A DNA stretch of 64,000 nt. Source: Macrostomum lignano. Taxonomy: Eukaryota. Positions 9,105 through 58,973 of this stretch are shown one piece after another; position 1 is the stretch's first letter, and every line of letters begins with the position of its first letter. A model generated the notes under the pieces. The model was not told the DNA's origin, did no database searches, and was given only the letters and a program-made list of their open reading frames with translations. The position numbers and the translations under genes are program-made. The stretch covers positions 124,001-188,000 of the forward strand of contig NIVC01001163.1 of the NCBI GenBank assembly GCA_002269645.1. Direction: 5' to 3'.

Positions 9105-12587
<3,483 letters not shown>

Positions 12588-13698
12588 CTTTGGCAGGTTT
12601 ATTATCTTCTGTTACGCTAATTTGCAATAAAAGTAGCAGAGGGACTGCGTGCTGCATCTATCAAAACAGAGTCACAAGCCAGTCAAAAAAGTATATATTT
12701 AGCCAATTTAAAACTATGAATAAGCTGAATGATTTGACTTATAGGCTTATCAACTTAAAATATTTAATATATGTAAAGTGTTTACATGCTAGTTTTTGTA
12801 ATAGGTTGCCAAAATGAAATAGGAAAAGTTTTTTTGATAGGATTTATAAAAATGGGATTTCAATAAAGGGTGCAGGACTAGCCAATACAAGCTTTATTGG
12901 AGACTCAGGGAGCCACTAATAGCCTTATCCCTATACAGCAATGTGCCATTATTTAAAATGCCTAGCTAGATCTAAAACCCTAATAATCTCTTATCTAAGA
13001 CTGCCAATGTCTATAAATACAATAAAGCCACAATGGACTTATAAAAAGAACATACAGTTCATTATACAATAAAATGGACACTCATTTTTGCTTAGTAAAA
13101 TTTGCTAAAACAACTAGCACATTAAGTCCCCTATAGTGGGCATTCAATTTCAAAATTCAAACATAAAAGTATTAAAAACATTGTTTTTTTAATTTACCCA
13201 TTTCCAAAATAAATCTTCAATGTTTAAAATTTTATATAAGCATATTAAGCCCCCTATGAGGGCATTCAAATTCAAAATTAAAACAATGAAAGCATTAAAA
13301 ATGTTTCTTAAATATTTGACAAATTTCCTATTGCAATTGGTATAAATTCTATTCTATATACATATTTGCCAACTGAATCTGAATTAATTAGGCCCATTAA
13401 CTACTGCCACCATTTGCAACTGCACCACTTTCTTTGTGTTGAAAATTAATATAAACAAGATTAAAGCAATTTAGATAGTTGATAAAAAGGCACATTGCAT
13501 TTCAGGCTAGGCCTAGCTTTATAATCCAACTCTCTTTCATCAATTGTCTATTAGACTAGTAAATAATAAAATTCAATTATTCAATCAACTCTATAAATTG
13601 CAAGTCTGCCAGGGTGCTAGTCACTTTGTCAACTAGTGTTTTGTCAAATGGTTGACAAAGTGACTACTTGCATTTAGCAGGGTTAGCAGTATTAGCTA

Positions 13699-22375: not shown

Positions 22376-23557
22376 ATAGACATCGCTTTGAGATGTGTTT
22401 TAGCTGTATTTGCCGTGGGTTACTGCGACTCAAATAATGGACAGTTGAATGAGTGCTTACGATCGAGCGTATAAAATACCTGTAACTACGGTTAAAAAGC
22501 TATAGTCTTTGTCATGTAATCTGTAAGTACGGTAATGGATAAATCAGTAGTACAGTGCATGGATTATCGCTCTGTGTTGTGCTTGGTTTCATAAATTGAA
22601 AGCAATATGGGGAGTCGGAATGATCAGTCAGTTAGGTACAAATGAACCTGTTTCTTAGGATAGGTAAAATTAATTGACACCATCCATGAACTGCTCATTC
22701 GTAAGAGATATTGCGATGAGGACCTATTTGAATTGATCAAAACTATTGACATCTGCGGATATGAAGACAAGCTGAACCTGTTAATAAAGGCGCTGTACAT
22801 TAAAGTGCACCGCTATTGGGGCATAGCAGGCCGTCTACTCAGTGTAGCTCGGAGTTGGCCGTTCGTTCCTTATGCTTTTCTTTGTTGATATAAATAGCAT
22901 TTATCTACCTTATCATGGTAGAGCGAGCCGCAGTTCCTGAACCAGCACTGCGGCTTAGAATGAAAGAGTCCAGTTACTTGCAGTAATGCAGTTACTTAAG
23001 TCCAAACGGCATCCTCCGTCTGATTTTCCTCTTTTTCCGTTGCTGCTTTTTATTGCCCCGCTTCTTCGACCCGCCGCCAGCTTGGTTGGCTGACGCGGTT
23101 GCGGTGGCAGCTGCTGCGTGAGCGGCTGCGGCCAACCGCCTGTGAATCTGTGAGTCCACCAGAGCGCCTGTGAAGGCCCGGCCTCGCCAGGTCACGGTGA
23201 CAACCAGGGGCAACCGCTGTCGCCACGCTGAGCATCCAGCCAGATTACGCCTTGCAGATGCACTCGGGTGCCAGGAGGCCGCGGAGTCGCTTCGTCGTGG
23301 ATTTCTGCCGGCTCGTCTGGGAGGCTGGAGCTGGTTGGTGTGGCGTCCTGTTGCGGATTGACGCTGTCGACACAAATACTTCTTGACTGCTGCTGCCACT
23401 GTTCGTTTTGCACCGTCTGGAAATATTTTGGGGTTTGAAAAGCCTACAGGTTATTGCAGTGCACTGAATTTGGGTCAGAACGAGCGCATCACTCTACTTA
23501 TAGGACTGGGAAGATTAGATTGCTCGAAAGGACCACTAGAAGTAACGCTAACTTCTA

Positions 23558-23753
23558 CCTTAGTGCGTCCAAAAAGTTCTTAGACACCCCTCCTATCTCT
23601 GCATCCGTTTAATCGATTTTTATAAAAATTTACACAAACCCGGGCTTATATCTAATGAGTTCAGTGCTAAAGTTTCAGCTTAATCGGGTTGACAGAGCAA
23701 AAGCAATCGATCATTTACTAAGGGTGTCTAAGAACTTTTTGGACGCACTAAGG
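23558..23753. mobile_element. 196-bp Tc1/mariner-type MITE in the paralog intron
   Basis: Perfect 32-bp TIR ccttagtgcgtccaaaaagttcttagacaccc with TA on both sides. Confidence 0.9.
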
Positions 23754-23817
23754 TAGTGGTATTTGAAATTTCTACTGTTGAAGTTCTATAAACACTAGAG
23801 ATTCAAAGTGGAGTATG

Positions 23818-24165
23818 GAAGTAGATACCCAGTGTGTGGGCGGGAAGTAGATACCCAGTGAGCAGTGTGTGGGCGGGAAGTAGATACCCAGTGAGCAGTG
23901 TGTGGGCGGGAAGTAGATACCCAGTGAGCAGTGTGTGGGCGGGAAGTAGATACCCAGTGAGCAGTGTGTGGGCGGGAAGTAGATACCCAGTGAGCAGTGT
24001 GTGGGCGGGAAGTAGATACCCAGTGAGCAGTGTGTGGGCGGGTAGTAGATACCCAGTGAGCAGTGTGTGGGCGGGTAGTAGATACCCAGTGAGCAGTGTG
24101 TGGGCGGGAAGTAGATACCCAGTGAGCAGTGTGTGGGCGGGGATTTTAGATGCCCAGTGAGCAGA
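23818..24165. repeat. 33-bp minisatellite, about 10 copies, in the paralog intron
   Basis: (agtagatacccagtgagcagtgtgtgggcggga)n. Confidence 0.95.
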
Positions 24166-26346
24166 GGAGTAGAATTGGGACCTGTACCCAATTCCCTATA
24201 AGGTCCGGCATGTCGCAGTCCAGCGCGGGAGTCATAATTAATTACCTCGGAAGTTTCCCCAGGACAGCCGCACGCGTCCACTCCGTGGCCACTTCCTCCG
24301 CGTCCTTCACCGCCGCTATCATCATGGCCGGCGACCTTGAACTCGTGCTGATTGTCGAAAATCGATAAAAGGGATTTTCGAATTCGTATCTTCAACGGCA
24401 TGCCGCGGCTTCAGTTCGGAGATTCTAGCAAATCTGGCAACGAGTCCTGGTGGGGATGGTGAAGAGCTGGGGTTAGCCTGTTTAATTCCTGCCTGGCCTC
24501 TGGCTGTGACAATCCTAGAAAAGAGGGGTTTGAGAGAGCAAGACAGACAGCTACGAGCAGGGAAGGTGCGGTGAATCATACATAGCCCAGGATGGGGCAG
24601 AAAAGCCACGCCAAGATCGAACCAATAGCGGATGGATTTGAGAAAGAGGCCTGAACTAGCAAACATCCCTCACCCCGCTCAGGACAGAAGAGTTGAGCTG
24701 AGAACATGAAGTGTGGAAAAAATAACTGGGTGCAGAGCCAGCCAGCATCTGATGGGGAGGAGCAAAATATGCATGCAACAGAGCGCAATAGCAAATTTAA
24801 GTCAGTTACTTCTTTTCAGCCACCGCAGGAGGGACCACAGTTTGTATTTTCACTCCGATTGTTCGTCAGAATAAACACACAGGCTGCATCTTCTCCCGAT
24901 AAGAAGGAAACAATCTTGGAAACAATACTATGTTACTAACATCGAGAGCATGCCCTCTTAGTGCTTGGAAATTTATTGGCGTTGTTTGGTTCGGCCTATT
25001 TATAGAATTGTCTGTTTCTGGACAGTGTGACGTCAGTTTCTATTTTTAGGCACCCATTTAATCAATAGACGGCAATCAATTCGTTGATAACACCACAGTG
25101 GAGCGCTTTAACAAATTAGAGAATTCTACTTTGGGATATGCAGTTTATAGAATATAAAGTCCCGACTCAGCTTAACTGATTTTTTAAAAACTGATTAAAT
25201 ACAAAAGCCGCATTTCCTACTTATAAGTAGTGCTGAGCAAACGTTTCGAACAGATAATTTGCTTGTATTATGCCGATTATTTCAAACAATTCGCTGGCAT
25301 AAATATTTTACAATGAAATGCATTCGATCAGTAACCAATTTCTGAGCCGGGTGCCCCAGGGAAGCGACCCCGTTCAGTAGCGCAAGGAAGTCAGTGTTGG
25401 CGGCGCGGGCTGAAGAGCTGCATCGAGAGCAATCAAGTGAATCCCTGGAGGCTTTTGTAGGCCAGCAGCGCTCGATCCACCGCATGCAGCATTGACCCGG
25501 ATTCGTAATATTACGAGTCTCCCATATCCTCTGATGAATCGCGTCGTATTTTAGCGAATACCCGCGAGCCTGTTGCGTAACACCAGCCCACCAAACAGCA
25601 TCTCCGCAATCTCCCGGCCGCTCGCTCATTCATGTTCACTCAGTCACTCTTCACTCCCACCTCTTCATTCATGTTCACTCAGTCACTCTTTACTCCCGTC
25701 TCTTCATTCGTGTTCACTCAGTCACTCTTTACAAATTCATTCTTCCTATCCTACCAGTTTCTATCAATCACTCCATACGCGATTTCCTACGTTTCCACTT
25801 GTAGTTTGTAATCATAATTTATTTCGTCAATAAAACGCAGGCGATGTTTTGCTTCCCTGGTTTTTCGTTCTTCCTTGTATCAAGTAGGGCTTCAAGCACC
25901 GGCATGGGGTGCCTGCCGGTCTTACAGAGGCCACACAGGGCGGCCTGCAGCCATGCAATGAGGCGCTGCACTCGCTATTCGACCGGCATAGGGATCCCGG
26001 ACAGGGAAGGGGGCAAAGTGGGGAGAATCCGGGAGGGGAAGACAGACTTGGGAGGTTGGGGCGAGTATGGCGGAGGAGAGCGAAGGATTGGAGGAGCTTA
26101 TCTACCCGTTCCGCAGCAGATGCCGAGGTGCTCGGAGGGCGCTGGTTGAGGCCGCTGAAAGCAGATCGCTAGAATGTCTTTAAATGATGAAGCCGGGTTC
26201 CATCCACTCGGATTTCGATGACGAGGCCCTGCATTTGCCAGTGAGGTCAGCAACTGATTTTTCTCTCAGCGAGCATCTGAGTCGAATTTGATATCCTGAA
26301 AATGATTAGGAATCGGCGTAGTGACTGACAACTTGAGCAGAAAGAA

Positions 26347-27037
<691 letters not shown>

Positions 27038-27769
27038 AAAATAATGAGTGACACCCGTAATGATCACAAGAAGCCCCGTCAAAGCTCTGAGAGTGCTGCA
27101 CTCATCGCGAACAAGCACCCATAAGCAGTGGCGAATGAGTTAAATAAGCAGAAAAGAGGATAAAAGACTCTTGCGTTTTCCCGTTTCCACCCACCTCCGC
27201 TGCTCCCTATTCCCCTGAACTGATTCGCAGATCCTCTTGCATCCTCTCGGCCTATTTTTCACCGAGAGACCCGCAACAGTCTGGGGATAATCAATCTTAG
27301 TTACCGGGGCAGTCCCCGCTTCCCTGCTTTCGGACCCTGAGCTGCCCCTCTTTTTCCCCTTGCTCCCCTCGCCCCAATCTCCCCACCATCCCCTCCGCGT
27401 CCCTCACCCCGTCAGGGCCTTCCGCTTCCTTCTCTTTTCGTTCGCGGCCTTCTCATTAATACGCATGGCCTGTCTTCAACTCCCCTCCATCCCCGGACCC
27501 CCGCTGTGCCGCGCTGCTCTGAGAGAGCCGCCAACCCCAACCGGACCCTGCTGGAGTCGGCTTGAGAAACTTTCTCCATCCCCCCCCCCAATTGCCGACG
27601 CTCCGTCTCTTTTATTCTGTCCGATTTTTGTCTTCTTGCGTCTCTCGCCGTCTCAGTGATATCACCGCCTCTCTGTCTGCGGCTACTTTCATCTCTCTCA
27701 TCTCACCGATTCTTTAATTTCTAGGCGTCTCCTTCTCTCGCGTTCTCTCCTTTTACAACTTTGTTTCCT

Positions 27770-28250
27770 ACTCTACTTCTCTTTACTTCTACTCTACTTC
27801 TCTCTCCCTCTACTCTACTTCCCTCTCTCCCTCTGCTCTACTTCTCTCTCCCTCTACTCTACTTCCCTCTCTCCCTCTGCTCTACTTCTCTCTCCCTCAA
27901 CTTTTTCCTTTCCCACACTCCACTCCCCTTTTCTCTCCCTCTACTCTACTTCTCTCTCCCTCTACTCTACTTCTCTCTCCCTCTACTCTACTTCTCTCTC
28001 CCTCTACTCTACTTCTCTCTCCCTCTACTCTACTTCTCTCTCCCTCTACTCTACTTCTCTCTCCCTCTACTCTACTTCTCTCTCCCTCTACTCTACTTCT
28101 CTCTCCCCCTATTCTACTTCTCTCTCCCTCTGCTCTACTTCTCTCTCCCCCTACTCTACTTTTCTCCCCGTCTACTTTTCCTTTCCCACCCTCCATTCCC
28201 CTTCTCTCTCCCTGTACTCCCTTTTTCTCTCCCTCTACTCTCCCTGTCTT
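27770..28250. repeat. Pyrimidine-rich 21-bp array (tctactctacttctctctccc)n
   Basis: SLPLLYF periodicity. Confidence 0.92.
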
Positions 28251-28849
28251 CTACAATTCGAACTAAATTTCGCGCCTCAATACAACAGTTGCAATGCAGG
28301 TAACCTGTGCTGTGTCTTACAATGCCTACGATTTACAAAAAATACAAATTTCAGCGGCAGAAATCTATTAGCACAGCCTGGCAAACCGCCCCTGATCCCC
28401 ACTTGGTGTTTTCCACAGTTGTTCCCTAATAGCGCCCCAATAACCTGCCTCTCTGTCCCGCGCCAACCCCGCCTCGCTTCTTTAAACACCGGAAGAAAAG
28501 GGAGCCCGTTCGCTTTGGGGGGGGGGTTGGCGATTCTTTTAGTAATGGAAGAGAGGAACTGGAAAACGGAGTGATCCCCATGCTGCCCATGAACCGTAAT
28601 CTTAGCCTGATCCCTATCGCTCTTTCAAGCCAGCCAGTTCCTAACCCAGCCCGCCCTCCAACTCTTTAATCCACTTTGCATTCAGCAGCAGACCTGGCTC
28701 TCCCATATGGCTGGCAGAAACTCCACCCCAACTCCCCTCTCAGCTGATAGGCAATACCAAAATACTGGGCACAACTGGGCTTGTGGGAGTCCATCTGCTG
28801 TCCTATAGACGCGTGTCAATAAGTGTGCTGCAACCGCTACAACTGTTTT

Positions 28850-29070
28850 GCATCCTAACACCCTCACACCCTCACATCCTAACACCCTCACATCCTCGCA
28901 TCCTAACACCCTCACATCCTCACATCCTAACACCCTCACACCCTCACATCCTAACACCCTCACATCCTCGCATCCTAACACCCTCACATCCTCACATCCT
29001 AACACCCTCACACCCTCACATCCTCACATCCTAACACCCTCACATCCTCACATCCTCACATCCTAACACA
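28850..29070. repeat. (catcctaacaccctca)-type minisatellite
   Basis: Visible tandem array. Confidence 0.9.
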
Positions 29071-29130
29071 CTCTATACATTAATTGTAGCATTCTAATCT
29101 ATAAATATTTCTATTAGGTATTAGTTCCTA

Positions 29131-30245
29131 CTGTCTGTCCCAGTGTCTGTCTCAGTGTCTGTCTCAGTGTCTGTCTCAGTGCCTGTCTCAGTGTCTGTCC
29201 CAGTGTCTGTCCCAGTGTCTGTCTCAGTGCCTGTCTCATGTCTGTCTCAGTGTCTGTCCCAGTGTCTGTCTCAGTGTCTGTCTCAGTGTCTGTCTCAGTG
29301 TCTGTCTCAGCGTCTGTCTCAGTGTCTGTCTCAGTGTATGTCCCAGTGTCTGTCTCAGTGTCTGTCTCAGTGTCTGTCTCAGTGTATGTCCCAGTGTCTG
29401 TCTCAGTGTCTGTCTCAGTGTCTGTCTCAGTGTGTGTCTCAGTGTGTGTCTCAGTGTGTGTCTCAGTGTCTGTCTCAATGTCTGTCTCAGTGCCTGTCTC
29501 ATGTCTGTCTCAGTGTCTGTCCCAGTGTCTGTCCCAGTGTCTGTCCCAGTGTCTGTCTCAGTGCCTGTCTCATGTCTGTCTCAGTGTCTGTCTCAGTGTC
29601 TGTCTCAGTGTCTGTCTCAGTGTCTGTCTCAGTGTCTGTCCCAGTGTCTGTCCCAGTGTCTGTCCCAGTGTCTGTCCCAGTGTGTGTCTCAGTGTCTGTC
29701 TCAGTGTCTGTCTCAGTGTCTGTTTCAGTGTCTGTCTCAGTGTCTGTCTCAGTGTCTGTCTCAGTGTCTGTCTCAGTGTCTGTCTCAGTGTCTGTCCCAG
29801 CGTCTGTCTCAGTGTCTGTCCCAGTGGCTGTCTCAGTGCCTGTCTCAGTGTCTGTCCCAGTGTCTGTCTCAGTGTATGTCCCAGTGTCTGTCCCAGTGTC
29901 TGTCTCAGTGCCTGTCTCATGTCTGTCTCAGTGTATGTCCCAGTGTCTGTCTCAGTGTATGTCCCAGTGTCTGTCCCAGTGTCTGTCTCAGTGTATGTCC
30001 CAGTGTCTGTCCCAGTGTCTGTCTCAGTGCCTGTCTCGTGTCTGTCTCAGTGTCTGTCCCAGTGTCTGTCTCAGTGTCTGTCTCAGTGTCTGTCTCAGTG
30101 TCTGTCTCAGTGTCTGTCCCAGTGTCTGTCTCAGTGTCTGTCCCAGTGTCTGTCCCAGTGTCTGTCTCAGTGCCTGTCTCATGTCTGTCTCAGTGCCTGT
30201 CTCAGTGTCTGTCTCAGTGTCTGCCTCAGTGTCTGTCCCAGTGTC
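29131..30245. repeat. 12-bp satellite (gtgtctgtctca)n
   Basis: Tandem array; reverse complement of the 35322-37423 array. Confidence 0.97.
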
Positions 30246-30765
30246 TAAGTGTCTTTGTGTCCGCCCGTCCATCTGTCTGTCCCCCTGTCCCCAGTCGATC
30301 CCATGTAGTTCCTATGCAACACCTACCTTTATCCCATCAATTGCTTTCATCATTCCCCAGGCAGTCAGGCCGTCAGTACGCCAGGCACGCGGCCCACAGA
30401 AGAGCTGCGACCACCCCCTGCTTTTCCTCTCCTCTGGACCGGCGCACCAGCACTGGTTTATCCCAGGATGGGGTCTTCAGACCTCGAAGCGCATCTTCTT
30501 CAAGTATTCCTTTGCTTAACTTTTCCCTTCAGGATTTTCTGCCCTCCAGCCGTGGCCGCCGCGTCTTTAATACACCCCACGAACCGCAGCCTGAGAAAGC
30601 AACCAGAGCGGCAGGCATGAACTGGGGGACCGGCACTGCACGGGCCTGGTGAGTGGCCCCACAAGGAGACAGGAAAAAATAGAGCTCTGCTCTCCAAGCG
30701 GTGAAGCTGATACTGAGATTCTTTAATATTTTCGTACGTGCAGTGCGGAAATAACTCAATGAGAT

Positions 30766-31526: not shown

Positions 31527-32970
31527 TCACTTTGGAATGGGTGGGAAGGCCGCTGAAATGAGATCGCCGGGTGGCTTGTCAGCTGTCAGCTTCATCCTAT
31601 GTCTATTCCCACTCTAGCTATCTCGTTTCCTTTATCTCTATTCCCTTATCTCTATTCTCACCCTATCTATCTCATTTCTCTAATCTCTTATCTCTATTCC
31701 CTTATCTCTATCCTCACCCTATCTATCCTATCTCCTTTCTCTTATCTCTATTCCTTTATCTCTATTCTCACCCTATCTATCTCATTTCTCTAATCTCTTA
31801 TATCTATTCCCTTATCTCTATTCTCACCCTATCTATCTCATTTCTCTAATCTCTTATCTCTATTCCCTTATCTCTATCCTCACCCTATCTATCCTATCTC
31901 CTATCTCTTATCTCTATTCCTTTATCTCTATTCTCACCCTATCTATCTCATTTCTCTAATCTCTTATATCTATTCCCTTATCTCTATTCTCACCCTATAT
32001 ATCTCATTTTTCTTATCTCCATTCTCACCCTATCATCTCCTTTCTCCTATCTCTATTCTCACCCTATATCTATCTCATCTCATTTCTCCTATCTCTATTC
32101 ACACCCTATCTATCTCATTTCTCCTATCCATCTCATTTCTTGATCTACCCTCATCACATGGACTCCATCAAAGTCTCAAGGAAGTGGCCAATAGCGGAGC
32201 TCATCCTAAAGCGGCATGATAAGCCATCGAAGATGTCAAAACTGCTCTCATACTGGGGGGAGAGGGGACGCCGGGCGGTGACCTCGAAGTCAAGTGGCCC
32301 CGCGGCAGCCGGGATTGGATTTGCCACTCGCATGTCCGGCTCCCGACCGCCTCCTCCCTCACATCCGGCCGCTCGCCCAGACACTGAGGCAGGCCGTCTG
32401 GAGGCTGGGTCGGGGCTGAGGCCCAACCAAATATAAGATGCAGACGGAGGAACTGAGAACAAGGCGGAAGCCCTCGCCGCGTTTGAGAGGGAGAGAGGGA
32501 AATCCCATTGAGGACTGATGCAGCTGCATCGATGCGGCTCTCGGGAGTCTGGGTGATGCAGAAGAGGCGATGTGGGAGGATGAAGAGGCCTCTGCAAAAA
32601 CTAGAAAGGGGAGGAGGGAGCCAGCAGCTTGCCGGGCAATCATGCGAGCATTAGGGAGAGACGGAGAGGGAGAGGTCTAAGAAGGCCTGCCATGCCCCCC
32701 CCCTAATCTCAGAGCGCTGAGCCGGAGTGAGGAGCGGAGAATGGGAAGCCTTGATGCCACCTCACACTCCCACTGTGACACGCATCCCAAAACCGCAGCA
32801 ATGCCTTACACAGAGGCAGTTGCAGCGCATTCAGTGAGAAGGCCTGTGTTTGTGTTTGCCGGGAGAAGTGATGAGGGAGCCCCGCTTCTGCAATGGAAAC
32901 TAAACAAGCAATCAATATCTCACAGAGTGAGTGAGAGCTGGGGATGAGCGCTGCGGGTGGTTCGGCTGCT

Positions 32971-33040
<70 letters not shown>

Positions 33041-33042
33041 GT

Positions 33043-33080
<38 letters not shown>

Positions 33081-33492
33081 GCTGTCTCACCGTGGTGAAA
33101 CCCGCCAACAAAGCCAGCAAACGGGTCGGCTGGGTACGGGGCTGGCGGGGGACCAGGCGGCAGAAACTGCGGCGGCGGCGGCTGCGGAGCCCCACTGCCA
33201 GTGCTGGCCGAGGAGCCGCCACCAATGGGAAATCCGGTCCCCGCGGAGGAAGAGACGGCGGCAGCGGCAGCCGCGGCCGCGGCGAAGGCGGCCTCCATAA
33301 AGCGGAGCTGCTCGAGCTCGTACAGCTTTCTGGGGTCGGCGGGAGGCCAGTAGAGCTGATGGGGCGGGAGCGGCGGCTGCGGCTGCGGCGGCTGAGGAAG
33401 GAGGCTGGCCACAGATGTTGGTGGGGGATCAGCCTTTGGCGACTGTGGAGGCGGCGGGGGCGGCGGGGGTGCCATGGTAGTTCCGATGCACG

Positions 33493-33530
<38 letters not shown>

Positions 33531-36500
33531 GGATTCTTGGACCCGCCGGCCTCCCGCTGCTGCTGCTGACGCTTCGCTGCAGCCGAAACCGCTGGCTTCC
33601 GCTGCTCGGGGACTTTGAACACGGGGTGCGGATCGGCGCCCCCCTGAGGACTCGACGATGCCGTCGATGGCGTCTGCGGATCTGCAAGCGGTTGCGGAGG
33701 TGGCGGTGGCGGGCGCCTGCGTTCCGAGTGACAGTCGTTGTGGTGCCACTTCATGGCCAGCTCGTTGATGAATCGCTTGGAGCAGTCGGGATGAGGACAA
33801 GAGACTGGGAGAAGCTGCTGCTTGGTGGCAGCGCGGCTGTGCTGCGGCTGCTGCTGCGGCTGCGAGCGCCTCCGGTTGATGATGGCCCCGTTGGAGGCGG
33901 CGGCGGCCGCTGCTGCGGCTCGACGCTTTCGTCCAGTTGACGGAGGTGAAGATCGGTGAGTCTTCTGCTGCTGCTCTGCCTGCTGCTCCTGGCACTCCTG
34001 CTGCTGCTGCTGCTGTGCGCTTGGCTCAGAAGAGACCAGGTCGCGCTGAGACGAGTCTAGCAGGGTGCCAACGTAGGTTCGACCGCGCCAGGTGACGTTA
34101 ACGACTAGCATGCCTGCAGTGCCAGATGCGAGATGAGCATGGGTGAGATGAGTATGGGTGAGGTGAGTATGGGTGAGATGAGCATGGGTGAGATGAGCAT
34201 GGGTGAGATGAGCATGGGTGAGATGAGTATGGGTGAGATGAGCATGGGTGAGATGAGTATGGGTGAGGTGAGTATGGGTGAGATGAGTATGGGTGAGATG
34301 AGTATGGTGAGGTGAGTATGGGTGAGATGAGTATGGGTGAGATGAGTATGGTGAGGTGAGCATGGGTGAGATGAGTATGGTGAGGTGAGCATGGGTGAGA
34401 TGAGTATGGGTGAGATGAATGGGGTGAGATGAGTGTGGTGAGATGAGTGGGGTGAGATGAATGGGGTGAGATGAGTGTGGTGAGATGAGTGGGGTGAGAT
34501 GAATGGGGTGAGATGAGTGGGGTGAGATGAGTGGGGTGAGATGAGTGGGGTGAGATGAATGGGGTGAGATGAGTGGGGTGAGATGAATGGGGTGAGATGA
34601 GTGGGGTGAGATGAGTGGGGTTGAGATGAGTGGGGTGAGATGAGTGGGGTGAGATGAGTGGGGTGAGATGAGTGGGGTTGAGATGAGTGGGGTGAGATGA
34701 GTGGGGTGAGATGAGTGAGATGAGATGAGTCAATGGTGATGGCCGATCAGGGGCCAGAGGAAATCGAGTTATTCAACCAGAATCGCCTAGCCGGCCACAT
34801 GGGCCTCAGCGGAAGGGTTGCAAGATCGGCAAGCAGCGCAAAGAGCCCCCCCCCCCGGCTGACAGCGCATTCGATATCAGACTAATCTGTGCCCCGGTGC
34901 ACCGATCGATAAGAGGGCCTGCGCACCCACCAGTGCTGTCAATGTGGAAACCATGTTTTAACTCCTTAACTTGCTTCAACTACCGCCCGGTGTGTTATCG
35001 CGGCCAGGCAGCAACCCCCTCCGCCTCCCGCCTCTGCAGGAGGTCGTAAATAATTAATTAGGGCGCGCTGAGCCGACAACAGATTAAGATGCAGACAGCG
35101 ACGAGAGGGAGGAAGTTAGGGAGGTAGCCAGGGCCTCTCAAGCAGGTATTGGTGGAGGCGCAAGTGCTTGCTAAACGAATTTGCTGCGCCGTCGGCCGGT
35201 TGGTGAAGTTGCATTTGGATTGACTTTTAGCGCTTACCAGTGCGCAAGATCAGAGCTGGATTCAAATTATTGCCTGCCAGCTTAGTTTAGTTTAGAGAGG
35301 AAAGGAGATTAATGATACTCTGGCAGACACTGAGAGAGACACTGAGAGAGACATTGAGACAGACACTGAGACAGACACTGAGACAGACACTGAGGCAGAC
35401 ACTGAGACAGACACTGAGACAGACACTGAGACAGACACTGAGACAGACACTGAGACAGACACTGAGACAGACACTGAGACAGGCACTGAGACAGACATGA
35501 GACAGGCACTGAGACAGACACTGAGACAGACACTGAGACAGACACTGAGACAGACACTGAGACAGACATGAGACAGGCACTGAGACAGACACTGAGACAG
35601 ACACTGAGACAGACACTGAGACAGACACTGAGACAGACACTGAGACAGACATGAGACAGGCACTGAGACAGACATTGAGACAGACACTGAGACAGACACT
35701 GAGACAGACACTGAGACAGACACTGAGACAGACACTGAGACAGACATTGAGACAGACACTGAGACAGACACTGAGACAGACACTGAGACAGACACTGAGA
35801 CAGACACTGAGACACACACTGAGACAGACACTGAGACAGACACTGAAACAGACACTGAAACAGACACTGAGACAGACACTGAGACAGACACTGAGACACA
35901 CACTGAGACAGACACTGAGACAGACACTGAGACAGACATTGAGACAGACACTGAGACAGACACTGAGACAGACACTGAGGCAGACACTGAGACAGACACT
36001 GAGACAGACACTGAGACAGACACCGAGACAGACACTGAGACAGACATTGAGACAGACACTGAGACAGACACTGAGACAGACACTGAGGCAGACACTGAGA
36101 CAGACACTGAGACAGACACTGAGACAGACACTGAGACAGACACTGAGACAGACACTGAGACAGGCACTGAGACAGACATGAGACAGGCACTGAGACAGAC
36201 ACTGAGACAGACACTGAGACAGACACTGAGACAGACACTGAGACAGACACTGAGACAGACACTGAGACAGACATGAGACAGGCACTGAGACAGACACTGA
36301 GACAGACACTGAGACAGACACTGAGACAGACACTGAGACAGACACTGAGACAGACATGAGACAGGCACTGAGACAGACATTGAGACAGACACTGAGACAG
36401 ACACTGAGACAGACACTGAGACAGACACTGAGACAGACACTGAGACAGACATTGAGACAGACACTGAGACAGACACTGAGACAGACATGAGACAGGCACT

Positions 36501-39500
36501 GAGACAGACATTGAGACAGACACTGAGACAGACACTGAGACAGACACTGAGACAGACACTGAGACAGACACTGAGACAGACACTGAGACAGACACTGAGA
36601 CAGACACTGAGACAGACACTGAGACAGGCACTGAGACAGACATGAGACAGGCACTGAGACAGACACTGAGACAGACACTGAGACAGACATGAGACAGGCA
36701 CTGAGACAGACACTGAGACAGACACTGAGACAGACACTGAGACAGACACTGAGACAGACACTGAGACAGACATGAGACAGGCACTGAGACAGACATTGAG
36801 ACAGACACTGAGACAGACACTGAGACAGACACTGAGACAGACACTGAGACAGACACTGAGACAGACATTGAGACAGACACTGAGACAGACACTGAGACAG
36901 ACACTGAGACAGACACTGAGACAGACACTGAGACACACACTGAGACAGACACTGAGACAGACACTGAAACAGACACTGAAACAGACACTGAGACAGACAC
37001 TGAGACAGACACTGAGACACACACTGAGACAGACACTGAGACAGACACTGAGACAGACATTGAGACAGACACTGAGACAGACACTGAGACAGACACTCAG
37101 ACAGACACTCAGACAGACACTGAGACAGACACTGAGACAGACACCGAGACAGACACTGAGACAGACATTGAGACAGACACTGAGACAGACACTGAGACAG
37201 ACACTGAGGCAGACACTGAGACAGACACTGAGACAGACACTGAGACAGGCACTGAGACAGACATGAGACAGGCACTGAGACAGACACTGAGACAGACACT
37301 GAGACAGACACTGAGACAGACACTGAGACAGACACTGAGACAGACATGAGACAGGCACTGAGACAGACATTGAGACAGACACTGAGACAGACACTGAGAC
37401 AGACACTGAGGCAGACACTGAGAGAAAAGTAGCGCAGCAGCAGCAGCCATACCGGGCGCTAACGGGGGGACTGCATGGGCATTTGAAGTGGGCATTGAAG
37501 AAGACAGTTGCCGCGGTCCTTGAAAGGGAAGAGAGAAGGCCCGAGGCTCGCTGCCCACTTTCCAGTCGCCGTCACCCAGTCGGAATCCGAGGCCAAACCT
37601 GCCCGTCCCCGCCCCGGGTGTCCGATATTCTCGGCCATCGGCCGGTCAGCTTGGCTGTTTGGATCTGATTCCTTCCCTTGCTTCGCCGGCGCCTCACTCT
37701 CGCTCCCAGTCTCCTCTCTTCCCCTCCCTTCACTCATTTCTCTCTATCCCTCGCCTGGTCTAAGTTGGGAATAATATACACACACTGCTGACTGGAGTGG
37801 GCCCAGTTTAGATGAGCTCCATTAATCCTTTCCAGCAAATAATTTGAAACAGTCTTAACAGTTATTATTAGTCACCACAGCTTACCTGAGCCGGTCTCCA
37901 GCCATACAATGCCGTCAAGGTTAATATTGGTGCCTGGATCGCACGGGCCGAGGCACTCGGGCTCAATGTTGGTAGCCTTAGTTGTGCCCGATGCTGCACT
38001 GACGGAGGCTGCTGGGTTGGCGGCGGCCTTCTTCATCTTTTTATTAGCCTGAAAAGGAATTTTAGCAGTAGTGATGAGTGCTGCTGCATGCATGACTGCA
38101 GGTGTGTTCGCTGCTGAGCTTGTTCTTAACTGGTAATGCAGCTTTGCTGTAGCTATATTACAGCCTTACTGTATTTGCTGTAGCTGCATTACAGCCTTAC
38201 TGTATTTACTGTAGCTATATTACAGCCTTACTGTATTTACTGTAGCTATATTACAGCCTTACTGTATTTACTGTAGCTATATTACAGCCTTACTGTATTT
38301 GCTGTAGCTGCATTACAGCCTTACTGTATTTACTGTAGCTGCATTACAGCCTTACTGTATTTACTGTAGCTATATTACAGCATTACTGTATTTACTGTAG
38401 CTATATTACAGCCTTACTGTATTTACTGTAGCTATATTACAGCCTTACTGTATTTACTGTAGCTATACTACAGCATTACTGTATTTACTGTAGCTATATT
38501 ACAGCATTACTGTATTTAGTGTAGCTGCATTACAGCCCTACTGTATTTACTGTAGCTATATTACAGCATTACTGTACTTACTGTAGCTATATTACAGCCC
38601 TACTGTATTTACTGTAGCTATATTACAGCATTACTGTATTTAGTGTAGCTATATTACAGCCTTACTGTATTTAGTGTAGCTATATTACAGCCCTACTGTA
38701 TTTACTGTAGCTATATTACAGCCCTACTGTATTTACTGTAGCTATATTACAGCCTTACTGTACTTACTGTAGCTATATTACAGCATTACTGTATTTACTG
38801 TAGCTATGAAAGCAATAACGGTAATGAGTTTGAAATGACGAATAATGTAAGCTCGTCAGCTTTTAACAAATTCTCCGGAATGAATCCCGTTACATCTGGG
38901 GAGTATCGAGTTCAAAAATATTCAAAGCCACTGATGCGGTACAGCTAACTGCCTGCCGATAGACCAATAGCGGCACTGAGCTGTGCTCAATGGGAGAATA
39001 TCAATTGCAGCACTTCCTGTTGTTTAAAGCCATACGTAGTCCTCTCTGAATGCCGATCCTGCTCTCTGGCTGTCTCATCAGAGCGGTCCCAGTCAGAGAA
39101 AGAGAATGCGACAAGTGCCATGGATGATTGCTTGAGAATAGAGGGAAAAACAGGTACGTATCAACCTGAATTACAATTCCCCAAGTCTAATTCCCCGGCC
39201 TAAGGGACTTGCTATCCAAAGACGACGATATTCTATAGAAACCTGGACTAGATGGAAGACAGACAGGCGGCCTGAGGCCCAACTGCAATCCTGATTTACG
39301 CAAGTGGAAAATTGAAGCGCACGGAGAGGCTGCGGTACTGCATGAGGTGATTTTATTAACGGGTGTTTGCCCCTCCAATTTTTCACTTCCACGGGCACTG
39401 GCTTCCAGTCCAGACAATCAGAGCTCCTTGGCTGGCTCATACGGCCCCCCTCTACATGTATACAACGGCCGAGTTTCGACATTTGGGTCTTCCAATGTCC

Positions 39501-41135
39501 TGAAAACTTATTGTGCTGGACTAAAACTAGCAGGTAGGCTGGCAAGTGTTCATGTGTAGCTCTGGCTAATAAATGAAACGAATATTGAACTGGAAATTGA
39601 AACTGAAAGAAGTAAAATAATAGCTGTGCCAGGAACACCCCATAGAAACCTCCAGAGCCGCCTCCCTCGGGGAGGGGGGACGACACAAATGCTAGTCCCT
39701 TGGTACTAAACTTTCCTGATCCGTGTTCTTTATCTTGCATTGAATGCAAACAGAATCCCCCCAGCGCATAGATATGACTGCGGCCTGGCCCGAGTGACAG
39801 CAGCGCGGAACTCGTCTGAGCAGTCAGCCCTCTCAAGCTTCAAAATGGGAAGAATGGGATTATAGAGCTCGCTATAGCGCGTGTATGTGTGGTTAGGGGA
39901 AGTGGGGAAATTGAGGGTGCAGGGGGAAGACTTGCCCCGGGGGAAAGGGCCGGGTGAATAGGGAAGAGAGACAGATGAGGAAGGGACGAGAGTGAGATCT
40001 TGCGTGGCGTGTGAAGTCCCTGGCGGGGACGACTGCTGGCCTCTCTGCTTTATAATACATAACACACACACACTGGGCCCAGTGAGCAGTAGGGAGCTCT
40101 TTCATCATCCATATATACATAATCTGCAATAGGCAGCAGCCTGAGCGAAGTGTTAGTGTGTTGAGCATTCCCTATCCCTTACCGCCACTCCCCAGCCAGC
40201 CAGCACAACAGAAATTGTTCCCGGGATCTGATCCCGGGAGGTGGCAGGCCGGGCGTTGAAGGGCAAATTGCCTAATCTCCCAGCTCCCCAGATGATGGCA
40301 GGGCGATAATCTGCATTCCTCAATCTGCTCAGCCACCACTGAGCTGTAGCTGAGCTGGGAGGGTTGGGGAAGGCAGTGACCAGACAGCAGGGGGAGCGAG
40401 AGTCAATCGGGATGGGAGAATGACTGTGGGCTGTTACCAGCCAACCATATTTATTAATTGCCTCTGCATTTTCTAGTTCAACAATTCAAGAAGGTGAGCT
40501 TCTTGAAGCAATGTGAGAGCATTGCTGCGATTCAGGTTTTATATTTTGTTGGCAACACTTAAACTCCTTCACATTCCTTCGCAATTAATGTCATTTGATG
40601 AGATGAGAGTGACTTTGATGAGATGAGTGTGGTTTTGATGAGATGAGTGTGGTTTTGATGAGATGAGTGTGGTTTTGATGAGATGAGTGTGGTTTTGATG
40701 AGATGAGTGTGGTTTTGATGAGATGAGTGTGGTTTTGATGAGATGAGTGTGGTTTTGATGAGATGAGTGTGGTTTTGATGAGATGAGTGTGGTTTTGATG
40801 AGATGAGTGTTGTTTTGATGAGATGAGTGTGGTTTTGATGTGATGAGTGGCTCCTTGATGTGATGAGTGGCCCCTTGATGTGATGAGTGGCTCCTTGATG
40901 TGATGAGTGGCCCCTTGATGTGATGAGTGGCTCCTTGATGTGATGAGTGGCAATTGGATCCTGTTGCAGATGCTGGACACATGCCAGCGGTCCTTACAGG
41001 CTAATATTGCAGTCTTGCTTAATCAAATACCAGCTCGTACTCAGAGAATACTGAATCGTTTCCTTACCTCGGACGGCTTGCCACCGCCGCTGCTCTTTCG
41101 TTTGTTCGACTGAGCTGAGGCTGAGGTTCTGTTAG

Positions 41136-41185
<50 letters not shown>

Positions 41186-41511
41186 TTGTTGTTCGTTTTG
41201 TCAAGTTTGGCGCCTTGTACTTCTTCTGGCGCTGGAGTCGACTCCGACGGTTGGGGCAGCGGCGGCGGCGGCGGCGGTGGCGATTCGGGAGACGCCGGGG
41301 GTGTCAGCGGGGCGGAGTCCTCGCTGATGATTGCGGCGGCGGCGGCGGTCTGTTTCGGAGTGGCAGCTATCGATGCTTCCGAGCCATTGCGAAGGTCGCC
41401 AGCCGTCTCTAGGTCCTGACTGTCCTCTTGCTGCTGCGGCAGCACCTCGCAAGTCTTGGATTTCCGTTTGATCTTCATTCTGAGAGCGGGGGAGTCCTTG
41501 TCTGTAGCCAT
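31527..41511 (-). CDS. ZNF608: ZNF608/ZNF609 (scribbler/brakeless)-like C2H2 transcriptional co-repressor; complement(join(31527..31552,33091..34113,37886..38048,41068..41511)), about 551 aa; last exon less certain
   Basis: Motifs include [33 protein letters not shown]|[19 protein letters not shown] and the single zinc finger [24 protein letters not shown]. Canonical GT-AG sites with phases 0, 1, 1; total 1656 nt. Confidence 0.9.
31590..32135. repeat. Pyrimidine-rich (ctatctctattctcacc)-type array in ZNF608 intron 3
   Basis: Degenerate tandem array. Confidence 0.88.
32975..33080. repeat. (CT)n microsatellite just inside ZNF608 intron 3
   Basis: Follows the donor CACG|GTGAGA on the minus strand. 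Confidence 0.9.
34125..34732. repeat. (gggtgagatgagtat)-type array abutting the exon 3 acceptor
   Basis: 14-15-bp tandem units. Confidence 0.93.
35322..37423. repeat. 2.1-kb 12-bp satellite (gacagacactga)n in ZNF608 intron 2
   Basis: Tandem array with visible higher-order variant blocks. Confidence 0.98.
38150..38808. repeat. 31-bp minisatellite (ctgtagctatattacagccttactgtattta)n
   Basis: About 21 copies; the unit contains ctgta/tacag inverted pairs. Confidence 0.95.
40600..40950. repeat. 20-bp minisatellite (gatgagatgagtgtggtttt)n
   Basis: Tandem array in ZNF608 intron 1. Confidence 0.95.
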
Positions 41512-44140: not shown

Positions 44141-44724
44141 GCAGATTTGCAATTAAAAATCATTGGCTACCCGTCTTCATCGTGTGACCTCACGTTCTAG
44201 GATTAGTGGATCAGCAGGAAACCTGGTGTGGCAGCGAACTACCCAGGTCCAAACCATTAATTGTAATCCAAAAAGAAGCCAAATATGAATAGAACAAAAT
44301 CAGTGACCGATCACCCACCCCGCAAACATTGAGCATTTTCCCTGCTTAAGAACAGAGTAGCTTCTTAGCTTGTTGGCAGTTGCAGAAGATAATTATCGCG
44401 GGTCGTCATCGCGATCTAGGCGGGATTCAGAGGACAGAAGTTGGCAGCAGGGAGGCAGCCACCCCCCCCCCCCAGCGCAGGCGGCCATTTGTTGTCGCCT
44501 TTCATTTGCTATCCCATATTTGCCGGCGTCCCGACATGGGCGCGGCGCGCAGGCACGCGACAACTGTCACCGGAGCCGCGTGCCCCGCGTGTTTACTCAG
44601 GAGGCACCGCCGGCGCCCGGGGGGGGGGGGTAAGCAAAATGGGAGGAGTCTTAAAGAGAGTTCCCGGCTAAACCTTGGAGTCCCAGAGCTAGAATCTGGT
44701 TCGCACTCGGTTTTCAGACAACTA

Positions 44725-45593
44725 CACCTTTTTACTTTCTATTTTGAAAAATCTGCACTCAATATTGACATCTTTGCATTCAATTTTGACACTGTGTTAC
44801 AAAACAGTGCCTTTATCTCGCCGTCTATGGAACAAAGCTTGCATATGCGCATCCACTTTTGACAGAGTGCATCCAGAAGTGACAGATTGCAGTAGCACAC
44901 ATTGAAAACAACCTTAGTTAACCGTATAAATACAGTAGCTAATCAGTTTGCCAAGTCGTATTACGTTCTGTATGGCATGTCCGCGAGTCAACGCCTAAGT
45001 TAGCGACGACGACAGGAGGCGGTTAACGACTTTTTTACCTGGCTCGTGCCTTGGGGATCAAAAGAACCACAGCGTATGCCGTTGGTAGAAGTGGACGAAT
45101 AAAAAAGCTGCCAAATGGAGATCAGATTAGAGTTCAAATCAGGACATGCTGGCGGTTTCATGAAGAACCTCGATTGAGACAAATCCCAATATTGCTCTGG
45201 CCGGGACCTGGGATCAGCGAACACTCGCCGGGGCGATTGGCCAGGGCGAACTCTCACCGGATCAGTCAGGGCGCGTAGGCCCCGCTAGGGTTGGGATCGG
45301 ATCTTTAATTGTCACTTCTGGGTGCACTCTGTCAAAAGTGGATGCGCATATGCAAGCTTTGTTCCATAGACGGCGAGATAAAGGCACTGTTTTGTAACAC
45401 AGTGTCAAAATTGCTTGCAAATTGTTAATTAAGGTTGAAGTTTGTCATTTTTCGGTTGAAATTCATCATTATTGCAATTGAGTTTGTCAAAATAGGTTGA
45501 ACATTTCTACAAGCAATGCCACAGACTGTCAAAATTGAATGCAAAGATGTCAATATTGAGTGCAGATTTTTCAAAATAGAAAGTAGAAAGGTG
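44725..45593 (+). mobile_element. Deleted Tc1/IS630-like transposon with long TIRs
   Basis: TA on both flanks. Left arm 44725-44884 is the reverse complement of 45310-45412 plus 45527-45593. An HTH-like remnant LARALGIKRTTAYAVGRSGRIKKLPNG lies at about 45040-45120, after a stop-interrupted ATG at 44977. Confidence 0.75.
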
Positions 45594-46214
45594 TAGCGAA
45601 GCGCACGTGTCCTATCGCCAGTAGAACGCCACAGACAATGGTGGACCTGACGTCGAAGAAAGTTGCGATGCAGATTTTTGTCTGTGCGGCCAGGCTGCAT
45701 AAAGATTGGGGGAAGAGAGTTAGCAATCCAAGTTCCGGTTCTCGGGTCTCCCTGGCTGAACCCGCCGCCGCCTTCATTTGTCCCAGCAGAGAGCTTTTCC
45801 CCTCGGCTTTTCTAACTCCCCACCCTCCCCAGCTGCATGCTTCCTTGTCTTCCCAAACCCCTGGGGGGCCGTCGGGTGAAGTCAGATTTCGTTAACTTGC
45901 GGATTTTGTTGGGCTATCAGGCTAAATCTGTGTCCCACGGTCAGTGACGTCATGCCCTGCGAATGGACGATGGGCAAAGCTGACAGTGTAGGGATGGGTC
46001 TGTGGAATCAGTGCTGATTGAACACATTGCCGCGTCAGCCTGTTTGTCATCCCACTAAGCAGGCCAGATTCCGAACTCTTACAGAGGCGGGCTTAGCAAC
46101 TGCTGAAGGCAGGCTCAGTCCGGTGCCCTCTGGTTCTCCATTTCACTTTACTTGGGGATTTCAATGGGATTTTATTCAGTTCAAATTGTCCTTACCCATT
46201 TCCCAATAGGTACT

Positions 46215-57600: not shown

Positions 57601-58882
57601 TAACTGTGTCAAATCTCAAAATCTCACTCTTGACTGTGTCAAATCTCACTCTTGACTGTGTCAAATCTCACTCTTGACTGTGTCAAATCTCACTCTTGAC
57701 TGTGTCAAATCTCACTCTTGACTGTGTCAAATCTCAAAATCTCACTCTTGACTGTATCAAATCTCAAAATCTCATTCTTGGCTATACCGAATATGCCCAA
57801 TATCGAAATCAAGCTGACAATCCGCACTATTTATTGCAAATCTACCAAATGGACAAGGACAAAAAACTGCACACTATTTCTGTACAAGAATTTCCCGCCA
57901 TAACTCCACAGCAAACCAATATATAGGTAAAACAGAAGTCTGCAAATAAAAAGCTTTATGACTCAGGGCGACATTTCCATATCTCTCTCTGCCAGACGCC
58001 CCGTCTATCCGCTAACCGCTTGTGTTGCATTTCCTAAGAAGACCTACAAAATGCAAATAAGCCGATGTGGTATTTAAGCATTACTAAGCAGTGTCTTAAC
58101 TATTCTCCCCCTTTCTCTAATCCCAACGCTGACGGGCCAGGACCTTCTTTTGATTTCAACTTTGCTGGCTAAAAATAGACTGATGCACCTGATACTGACG
58201 CACGATTGGCAGAGATGCCTGACTGGCTCCCGTTTAAAGCATTTAAAGCAGTTCCTACGGGGGTCGGCAAGCTCTATCTCTATCCAGCCCTGTTGAAGGC
58301 TTGTGTCTCTTCTCAGATCTAGTCTCTAGTATTTAGTCTCTCCTCTCTTCCATCTCCTCTCACCCCTCATCTAGCAAGATTCTCTAATCTTCAAGCCAAT
58401 GCGGGCAACTGAAGCTTTTGAATTATAAAATACAAGCACGCTCTTTTTTAATTAAGTCGGTTGTTCTATAACCACCGATATGAAATCTTATGTATTAAAA
58501 TGTATATAACTGCCGATCGCTCGCTTCACTGAACGCACAGTCTGAAAACGAATCGGTTTGCTTTCCTTAATCGATTTTTCGCCCCAGCGCAAAGTGGAGG
58601 GGAGACTGCCAGCAATCGGCCGGGGAAATCCTATTAAAGTGCACAGCAGTGCGCATGTTGTGGCTTCCAATGTATTGTGTCTCTCTACCTACCTACCTAC
58701 CTACCTACCTACCTATCTATCTATCTATCTACATATCTATGTATCTATGTATCTATCTATCTATCTATCCATCTATCCATCTATCTATCTATCTATCTAT
58801 CTACCTATCTATCTACCTATCTATCTATCTATCTATCTATCTACATATCTATGTATCTATGTATCTATCTATCTATCTATCC

Positions 58883-58913
<31 letters not shown>

Positions 58914-58973
58914 CATCTATCTACCTATCTATCCATCTATCCATCTATCTATCCATCTATCTACCTATCTATC

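What the first reader, a model, noticed from the sequence alone, without database searches (positions are those of the whole stretch)
22992..24401. Hidden mini-paralog of ZNF608/scribbler lacking the zinc finger
Seen: same strand, about 7 kb downstream of the full gene. Exon 1 has LKIRIRK (main gene: LRMKIKRK) and ends with the same tcc gag|GTAA junction. Exon 2 has the conserved PGT-x-x-x-L-x-G-x-x-W...VV-x-VTWRGR...G-x-L-x-D domain without the intron that splits it in the main gene, then ends in a basic NLS-like tail. One extra C in a C4 run would restore a roughly 190-aa ORF. Known: this conserved N-terminal region of Brakeless/ZNF608/609 is implicated in co-repressor interactions. Inference: a tandem duplicate with intron loss that could act as a DNA-binding-less decoy, if the frameshift is a homopolymer error or polymorphism.
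Basis: partly seen in the sequence, partly recalled or inferred. Interest (0 to 1): 0.75.

Follow-up and report, generated by a model that had tools for sequence, protein, structure and literature searches.

The report
Truncated scribbler/ZNF608 paralog, one frameshift
Downstream of a scribbler/ZNF608-type co-repressor gene lies a short partial copy that keeps the family's conserved beta domain but has no zinc finger. Its sequence says it was kept as a working gene for a long time, but in this assembly one missing base breaks its reading frame.

Summary
On the minus strand, 8.5 kb downstream of the main gene's last recognisable exon, sits a two-exon unit. It encodes the family's N-terminal basic motif (LKIRIRK..QHEFKV), the D2 / 'ZNF609_beta' domain, and a basic patch. 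It has no C2H2 finger. One extra C in the C4 run at 23207-23210 gives a 193-aa ORF.

Homology is real: BLASTP E = 3e-12, and independent orthologs hit both halves in two different frames.

The missing intron is a true loss. A beetle gene, a fish gene and the window's main gene all carry a phase-1 intron in the same Gly codon.

The codon-position pattern (identity 0.63/0.82/0.37) and an otherwise stop-free ORF argue for long purifying selection. All 14 invariant D2 residues are also kept. It is not an old pseudogene. The single frameshift is therefore either very recent or an error or polymorphism. I cannot tell which, and put the odds near even.

The 'DNA-binding-less decoy' idea is untested and rests on a weak premise. 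The family's finger shows no sequence-specific DNA binding, and flies already make a finger-less isoform, Bks-A. No counterpart was found in 1.84 billion representative proteins. Interest is modest.

The parts
24246..24401 (-). Mini-paralog exon 1. ATG at 24401, 52 codons, with the N-terminal basic motif LKIRIRK..QHEFKV. Phase-0 donor tcc gag|gtaatt.
   Evidence: The motif is unique to the two gene starts in the window. It aligns with the family motif LKMKIKRK..KHEIV.
23417..24245 (-). Inferred intron of the mini-paralog. It holds a 33-bp x 10.1 tandem repeat (23830-24164) and a MITE-like insert bounded by 56-nt inverted arms (23534-23589 and 23722-23777).
   Evidence: GT..AG boundaries read. 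Splicing is inferred, not shown.
22992..23416 (-). Mini-paralog exon 2: linker, D2 domain, Ala-rich helix, basic patch, and stop TAA at 22994-22992.
23142..23284 (-). D2 / ZNF609_beta domain of the copy, uninterrupted by an intron but read in two frames.
   Evidence: The AF2 model places strands at residues 108-111, 123-129 and 132-138, with pLDDT 70-81.
23207..23210 (-). C4 run (G4 on the plus strand) where one additional C restores the frame. It lies in the variable loop between beta-strands 1 and 2, within about 9 nt of the position of the lost ancestral intron.
   Evidence: It is one of 10 homopolymer runs of 4 or more bases in the CDS.
23013..23066 (-). Basic patch KKRGNKKQQRKKRKIRRR, NLS-like. 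It is collinear with the basic stretch that follows D2 in family members.
   Evidence: aligned with GRKRR in the main gene, GRGRGNRRRGGR in M. lignano and KGRGKRGR in Carabus.
41068..41511 (-). Main gene exon 1 ([17 protein letters not shown]...GGGKPSE). Phase-0 donor tcc gag|gtaagg.
37886..38048 (-). Main gene exon 2, carrying the first half of D2 (...[18 protein letters not shown]|). Phase-1 donor.
32912..34113 (-). Main gene exon 3 (its maximal extent to the ORF stop). It carries the second half of D2 ([21 protein letters not shown]) and the single C2H2 finger at about 33728-33799.

Best explanation
The unit is a partial tandem duplicate of the 5' part of the neighbouring scribbler/Brakeless/ZNF608-family gene.

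It kept three collinear modules: the N-terminal basic motif, the D2 (ZNF609_beta) three-stranded beta domain, and the basic patch that follows D2. It ends before the C2H2 finger and the whole C-terminal half.

It kept the phase-0 intron upstream of D2 and lost the ancient phase-1 intron inside D2.

For most of its history it was maintained by purifying selection as a protein of about 193 aa, probably nuclear and finger-less. Constraint was relaxed or altered: the copy is 45-52% identical to every family member in D2, whereas canonical members are 64-81% identical to each other.

In this assembly a single missing base in a C4 run breaks the frame in the loop between strands 1 and 2. This lesion is either an assembly or polymorphism artefact (the gene is intact in at least some genomes, about 0.45) or a very recent fixed inactivation (about 0.45).

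Inferred mechanism if intact: a D2-only nuclear protein would occupy whatever partner D2 binds, without bringing the finger or the C-terminal regions of the full-length co-repressor. It would then modulate or compete with the full-length protein, much as a constitutive version of the fly finger-less isoform Bks-A.

Shown: homology, architecture, intron history and past constraint. Inferred: splicing, nuclear location and the competitive mechanism.
For: Homology of D2.

All 14 columns that are invariant across the 15 sequences are kept in the copy: G101, L106, W111, G117, LVV123-125, VTWR127-130, G136, L138, D140.

N-terminal motif. The basic patch is collinear with the family's.

Intron 1 is phase 0 and lies 40-48 codons upstream of PGT in the main gene, in the copy and in M. 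lignano.

The D2 intron is ancestral and was lost in the copy.

Evidence of selection:
- Identity by codon position is 0.63/0.82/0.37, with pS 0.61, pN 0.31 and dN/dS about 0.31.
- If the copy's branch had been neutral, expected 2nd-position identity would be about 0.55. The observed 31/38 has P = 6e-4 with symmetric branches and P = 0.05 if only 30% of the divergence lies on the copy's branch.
- A neutral simulation gives P(no stop in 192 codons) of 0.13 at d = 0.1, 0.003 at d = 0.4 and 0.0004 at d = 0.64, and predicts many frameshifting indels. Exactly one frameshift and no stops are seen.

The copy shares lineage-specific residues with the main gene and the M. lignano gene (W-L, RGR, D-S), placing the duplication inside this lineage.

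Precedent for a functional finger-less form: Bks-A (PMC1868043).
Against: As assembled, the frame is broken. The product would be 126 aa ending in mid-D2.

The copy is the only sequence that deviates at about 7 nearly invariant D2 positions: C98R, V110I, E113D, N126T, Y134F, V135T, T137A. That is compatible with decaying constraint.

No homolog of the mini form was found in 1.84 billion representative proteins. The only hit was a full-length M. lignano gene, E = 6.5e-4. The word-based search found nothing. There is no mini copy within 10 kb either side of the M. lignano gene.

There is no expression evidence, and no canonical AATAAA just after the stop.

The selection tests rest on only 38 codons that were chosen because they are similar.

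D2's molecular partner is unknown, so the competitive mechanism is conjecture.
Confidence: 0.8

Rival explanations
1. Plain, long-dead pseudogene: a partial duplicate that never functioned and has drifted neutrally since duplication.
For: The frame is broken. D2 is highly divergent, with deviations at otherwise nearly invariant positions. No homologs of the mini form were found elsewhere. It is truncated relative to its parent.
Against: Third codon positions are near saturation (37% identical) while second positions are 82% identical. P = 6e-4 under a neutral copy branch. There are no in-frame stops in 192 codons and only one indel, against expectations of several stops and 5-30 frameshifting indels at the observed divergence. 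All 14 invariant residues are kept.
Confidence: 0.05
2. Not a separate gene but an alternative 3'-terminal exon of the main gene. Main exon 1 (donor at 41068, phase 0) would splice to 23416 (phase 0) and give a finger-less isoform, analogous to fly Bks-A.
For: Both junctions are phase 0 and therefore compatible. The two lie on the same strand with no recognisable gene between 32912 and 24401. The family is known to make a finger-less isoform.
Against: The unit has its own ATG, preceded by an in-frame stop, and its own copy of the N-terminal family motif. It also has a donor at the homologous position. Together these mark a duplicated gene start, not a mere exon. The frame is still broken either way.
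Confidence: 0.1
3. The sequence is correct and the frame is restored during expression. A -1 P-site slip of tRNA-Pro on C CCC would give exactly the same GCPLVV product as an extra C.
For: The -1 codon within the C4 run is also CCC, so re-pairing would be perfect. A 0-frame stop follows four codons later.
Against: There is no canonical X XXY YYZ heptamer and no evident stimulatory element. Recoding of this kind is very rare in animal nuclear genes. Nothing here tests it.
Confidence: 0.02

Closest known systems
Drosophila Brakeless/Scribbler isoform Bks-A (929 aa)
   Same: It contains the conserved D2 domain but not the C2H2 finger or the C-terminal D3/D4 regions. It is nuclear, binds Tailless and Atrophin, and represses when tethered (PMC1868043).
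   Different: Bks-A arises from the same gene by alternative processing and is far longer. The element here is a separate duplicated locus of about 193 aa with a strongly diverged D2, and its frame is broken in the assembly.
Canonical scribbler/ZNF608/ZNF609 genes (the window's main gene; M. lignano PAA79269.1; Carabus 'scribbler'; Liparis ZNF609)
   Same: They share the N-terminal LKxKIKR..HE-V motif, the D2 / PF27627 ZNF609_beta domain, the basic patch after D2, and a phase-0 intron upstream of D2.
   Different: The copy has no zinc finger, no C-terminal half, and no phase-1 intron in D2. Its D2 is 45-52% identical to the others, against 64-81% among canonical members. Neither the copy nor the window's main gene shows the LxID Integrator-binding strand described for ZNF608/609.
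Protein encoded by circ-ZNF609 (exon-2 circle, 753-nt ORF)
   Same: It is a short finger-less N-terminal product of a family member (PMC5387670).
   Different: It is made by back-splicing, not from a duplicate gene. Whether it contains D2 was not established here. In the fish ortholog the first coding exon ends at the D2 intron, which would leave only half of D2; this is a lead only.

Membership tests
Scribbler/Brakeless/ZNF608/ZNF609 family | D2 / ZNF609_beta domain (PF27627): PGT-x-V-x-L-x-G-x-x-W ... LVV-x-VTWR ... G-x-L-x-D | tested here: met
   BLASTP E = 3e-12 against the main gene. tblastn hits from several orthologs. All 14 invariant columns are kept. The PF27627 HMM itself is absent from the local Pfam copy (one search returned nothing relevant), so it could not be scored directly. 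The family tag comes from the precomputed annotation of the hits.
Scribbler/Brakeless/ZNF608/ZNF609 family | Single C2H2 zinc finger downstream of D2 | tested here: not met
   The ORF stops 50 codons after D2. The only C2H2 pattern in the window is the main gene's, at 33799.
Scribbler/Brakeless/ZNF608/ZNF609 family | N-terminal basic motif L[KR]xKIKR[KT] followed by HE[IV]V | tested here: met
   LKIRIRK..QHEFKV sits at residues 3-23. The motif is found only at the two gene starts in the window.
Scribbler/Brakeless/ZNF608/ZNF609 family | N-terminal acidic LxID strand that binds Integrator INTS13-14 (bioRxiv 10.1101/2024.01.24.576984) | tested here: not met
   No W[DE]..L-ID or LxIDL pattern is associated with either gene in any frame of the window. 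The motif is present in the M. lignano, Carabus and P0001 sequences.
Scribbler/Brakeless/ZNF608/ZNF609 family | Ancient phase-1 intron in the Gly codon between the two halves of D2 | tested here: not met
   Present in the window's main gene, Carabus and Liparis. Absent in the copy and in M. lignano.
Processed (retro)pseudogene | No introns, a poly(A) remnant and target-site duplications | tested here: not met
   A phase-0 intron is retained at the homologous place, with GT..AG boundaries. No A-run follows the stop. The copy lies in tandem on the same strand as its parent.
Expressed protein-coding gene | Intact ORF and transcripts with the predicted junction | not testable with these tools
   The ORF is broken by 1 nt in the assembly. 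No reads or RNA-seq are available. Exact-sequence look-ups of window ORFs found nothing on record.

The most novel reading that the evidence does not exclude
The frameshift is an assembly error or a segregating allele, and the organism expresses a stand-alone nuclear protein of 193 aa. That protein would consist only of the N-terminal motif, D2 and a basic patch. It would act as a natural antagonist or modulator of the full-length Scribbler/ZNF608-type co-repressor by competing for D2's still-unknown partner.
Probability: 0.25. Interest if true: 0.5.

Novelty: new variant of a known kind. Interest (0 to 1): 0.3.

Why it matters
D2 (ZNF609_beta) is conserved across the bilaterians compared here: the fish and beetle domains differ at only a few positions. 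The fly study found only a weak Atrophin interaction for D2 together with the finger, and its function remains unassigned.

If this minimal 'D2-only' gene is alive, it would show that D2 can be selected for on its own, without the finger or the C-terminal regions. It would also give a compact bait for finding D2's partner.

If it is dead, it is an ordinary, recently inactivated partial duplicate. It would still be a clean example of intron loss at an ancient intron position.

Tried and rejected
1. Word-indexed protein searches. The repaired copy gave no hits. A low-complexity-free query from the main gene also gave none. Only the first main-gene query returned family members.

2. phmmer against 1.84 billion representative proteins gave one hit, a full-length M. 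lignano gene. No mini-form relatives appeared.

3. Exact look-ups of window ORFs and of the 126-aa frameshifted product found nothing on record. No same-species or sister-species DNA could be obtained.

4. The local Pfam copy lacks PF27627.

5. The Rfam scan of the window found nothing, so it gave no taxonomic or RNA clue.

6. The AF2 model is confident only in D2. A Foldseek search of the PDB gave nothing at E <= 0.001, so it says nothing about the fold.

7. Tiny-intron idea. The copy has 14 extra nt in the loop, a length of 3k+2, so removing them would restore the frame. The only GT..AG pair in the loop is 10 nt, the wrong length and far too short. Rejected by reading.

8. Intron-scar idea. 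Short matches (GCTCAG, GTGGYGAC) exist between the copy's loop and the main gene's donor region. A rough estimate gives about 0.15 for such a match arising by chance, given the offsets tried, so they are not significant. The frameshift lying within about 9 nt of the lost intron's position remains an unexplained coincidence (about 5% by chance).

9. I first thought the intron was a gain in the main gene, because M. lignano lacks it. The beetle and fish loci overturned this.

10. blastn found no nucleotide similarity between the two loci outside D2.
Full report
**What is there**

The window is eukaryotic and very rich in simple repeats. A scribbler/Brakeless/ZNF608-type gene lies on the minus strand.
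- Exon 1, 41511-41068: [17 protein letters not shown]...GGGKPSE, donor tcc gag|gtaagg, phase 0.
- Exon 2, 38048-37886...[27 protein letters not shown]|gtaagc, phase 1.
- Exon 3, from 34113: cag|GC ATG CTA GTC..., encoding [21 protein letters not shown]. It also carries the single C2H2 finger [24 protein letters not shown] at about 33799, and the ORF stays open to 32912.

The closest database relative recovered is a Macrostomum lignano protein, PAA79269.1 (P0014). It is 71% identical over a 62-aa BLASTP alignment spanning D2, and 81% over the 42 core D2 columns. It also has a similar finger and a similar VFKVP motif. From this I infer, without showing it, that the organism is a flatworm or something near one.

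**The finding itself**

- Exon 1 of the copy is 24401-24246: MPLKIRIRKSLLSIFDNQHEFKVAG...PGETSE, donor tcc gag|gtaatt, phase 0. An in-frame TGA lies four codons upstream of the ATG.
- An 829-nt inferred intron follows. It carries a 33-bp x 10 tandem repeat (23830-24164) and a MITE-like insert with 56-nt inverted arms (23534-23777).
- Exon 2 begins after atttccag at 23416. In one frame it reads TVQNEQ...PRPPGTRVHLQGVIWLDAQRGDSGCPW and stops four codons later.
- In the frame offset by one base it reads LPLVVTVTWRGRAFTGALVDSQIHRRLAAAAHAAAATATASANQAGGGSKKRGNKKQQRKKRKIRRRMPFGLK*.
- One extra C in the CCCC at 23210-23207 joins the two frames into 193 codons.

**Is it more than chance?**

- The repaired product matches the main gene's D2 at 49% identity over 45 aa, E = 3e-12.
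- Unrelated orthologs, from insect-like Logan ORFs, marine-eukaryote transcripts and M. lignano, hit the two halves separately in different frames. This confirms both the homology and the frameshift.
- The alternating basic heptad occurs only twice in the six-frame translation, at the two gene starts. Expected counts are 0.52, or 0.06 when anchored near a Met.
- In a 15-sequence alignment the copy's LKIRIRK..QHEFKV lines up with the family's LKMKIKRK..KHEIV. Its C-terminal basic patch lines up with the basic stretch that follows D2 in other members.
- The copy is therefore collinear with roughly the first 270 residues of the parent and ends before the finger. No second C2H2 exists anywhere in the window.

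**Intron history**

I first suspected that the D2 intron was a gain in the main gene, because the M. lignano gene lacks it. Fetching two more genomic loci reversed that view.
- Carabus (beetle): ...GAA GGC G|gtgagt ... ttccag|GA GTC CTT GTT.
- Liparis ZNF609 (fish): ...GAG GAC G|gtgagc ... ctgcag|GT ATG CTG GTT.

Both have the intron in the same Gly codon and the same phase as the window's main gene. The intron is ancestral, and the copy lost it, as M. lignano did independently.

The upstream phase-0 intron lies 40, 48 and 46 codons before PGT (SGT in M. lignano) in the main gene, the copy and M. lignano respectively. This argues for a DNA-level duplication followed by loss of the 3' intron, not a retrocopy.

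**Gene or pseudogene?**

Outside D2 there is no detectable nucleotide similarity between the two loci, so the duplication is old.

Within D2 (38 aligned codons):
- Identity by codon position is 0.63/0.82/0.37.
- pS = 0.61 and pN = 0.31, giving dN/dS of about 0.31.
- If the copy's branch had been neutral, second positions should be about 55% identical. The observed 31/38 has P = 6e-4 with symmetric branches and P = 0.05 if the copy carries only 30% of the divergence.

A neutral simulation gives P(no stop in 192 codons) of 0.13 at d = 0.1 and 0.0004 at d = 0.64. It also predicts many frameshifting indels. The copy has no stops and one frameshift.

All 14 invariant D2 columns are retained, although the copy alone deviates at about seven nearly invariant ones. 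It is 45-52% identical to every member, whereas canonical members are 64-81% identical to each other.

My reading is long-term purifying selection with relaxed or altered constraint, followed by one very recent lesion or an error.
- The missing base lies in a homopolymer. That is the usual place for long-read deletion errors, but also for real slippage mutations. It is one of 10 runs of 4 or more bases in the CDS.
- I rate 'intact in the organism or in some alleles' and 'recently fixed pseudogene' as about equally likely.
- The caveats are the small number of codons and ascertainment, since the codons were chosen for their similarity.

**An unexplained detail**

The frameshift sits in the variable loop between strands 1 and 2 of the AF2 model, within about 9 nt of the lost intron's position. 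The chance of this is about 5%. An imprecise genomic deletion of the intron could explain it. That would, however, require the intron loss itself to be recent. I found no significant intron remnant.

**Function**

D2 is predicted as a three-stranded beta meander followed by a helix, with pLDDT 70-81. The rest of the protein is predicted disordered. No structural neighbour was found.

From the literature:
- Fly Bks-A has D2 but no finger. It binds Tailless and Atrophin and represses when tethered.
- The finger, with or without D2, shows no sequence-specific DNA binding.
- D2 plus the finger gives only a weak independent Atrophin interaction (PMC1868043).
- ZNF608/609 bind Integrator INTS13-14 through an N-terminal LxID strand (bioRxiv 10.1101/2024.01.24.576984). 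Neither gene in this window has that motif.

So 'DNA-binding-less decoy' is not well founded as phrased. The defensible inference is narrower: a nuclear D2-only protein would engage D2's unknown partner without the rest of the co-repressor, and would modulate or compete with the full-length protein.

**Comparison and novelty**

It belongs to the family by its D2 domain and N-terminal motif. It fails the finger, LxID and D2-intron criteria.

The nearest functional analogue is the Bks-A isoform. A looser analogue is the circ-ZNF609 product.

No stand-alone D2-only relative turned up in 1.84 billion representative proteins. The window's own species appears to be absent from those collections, so the scope of that negative is limited.

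Verdict: a real, lineage-specific, truncated paralog; a new variant of a known kind; current functional status unresolved; modest interest.

Noticed in passing
window 9909-12587 (-): Exons of a non-canonical poly(A) polymerase (TENT4/Trf4/Cid1-like). Pfam hits are NTP_transf_2, MTPAP-like_central and PAP_assoc. One intron (about 10.2-11.3 kb) is filled with a long CLPLPVCL-type minisatellite.
   Followed up: partly
window 51640-52452 (-): An ORF ending in a clear SH3 domain (SH3_1, E = 2e-16). It is probably the last exon of a gene upstream of the main scribbler-like gene.
   Followed up: partly
window 196-1361 (-): A reverse-transcriptase fragment, apparently of a non-LTR retrotransposon (RVT_1, E = 4e-27). 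It is split over two overlapping frames, so it is a decayed copy.
   Followed up: partly
window 35287-37418 and 26247-27118, 28000-30650, 58558-61086: Kilobase-scale microsatellite and minisatellite arrays. One of them occupies about 2 kb of the main gene's D2 intron. They produce long spurious ORFs on both strands.
   Followed up: no
window 23534-23777 and 23830-24164: Inside the copy's intron: a MITE-like element with 56-nt inverted arms (82% complementary) and a 33-bp x 10 tandem repeat (97% matches).
   Followed up: partly
window 44722-45596: Nested inverted repeats of 112 nt (97% complementary) and 76 nt (96%), 425 and 723 nt apart. They lie about 3 kb upstream of the main gene and may be a foldback element.
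   Followed up: no
window 41511 upstream region; whole window: The main scribbler-like gene, as modelled from its ATG at 41511, lacks the LxID Integrator-binding strand. That motif is present in the M. lignano, beetle and other orthologs. Either the motif was lost in this lineage or an upstream exon lies outside the window.
   Followed up: partly
window about 24515 (-): A strong acceptor-like sequence, cccctcttttctag|G, lies about 110 nt upstream of the copy's ATG. It could be a 5'-UTR or spliced-leader acceptor if the organism trans-splices. This is speculative.
   Followed up: no
L001 (M. lignano NIVC01000644.1) 10001-12973: The M. lignano ortholog has only two coding exons. It kept the phase-0 intron upstream of D2 and has lost the ancient D2 intron.
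   Followed up: yes
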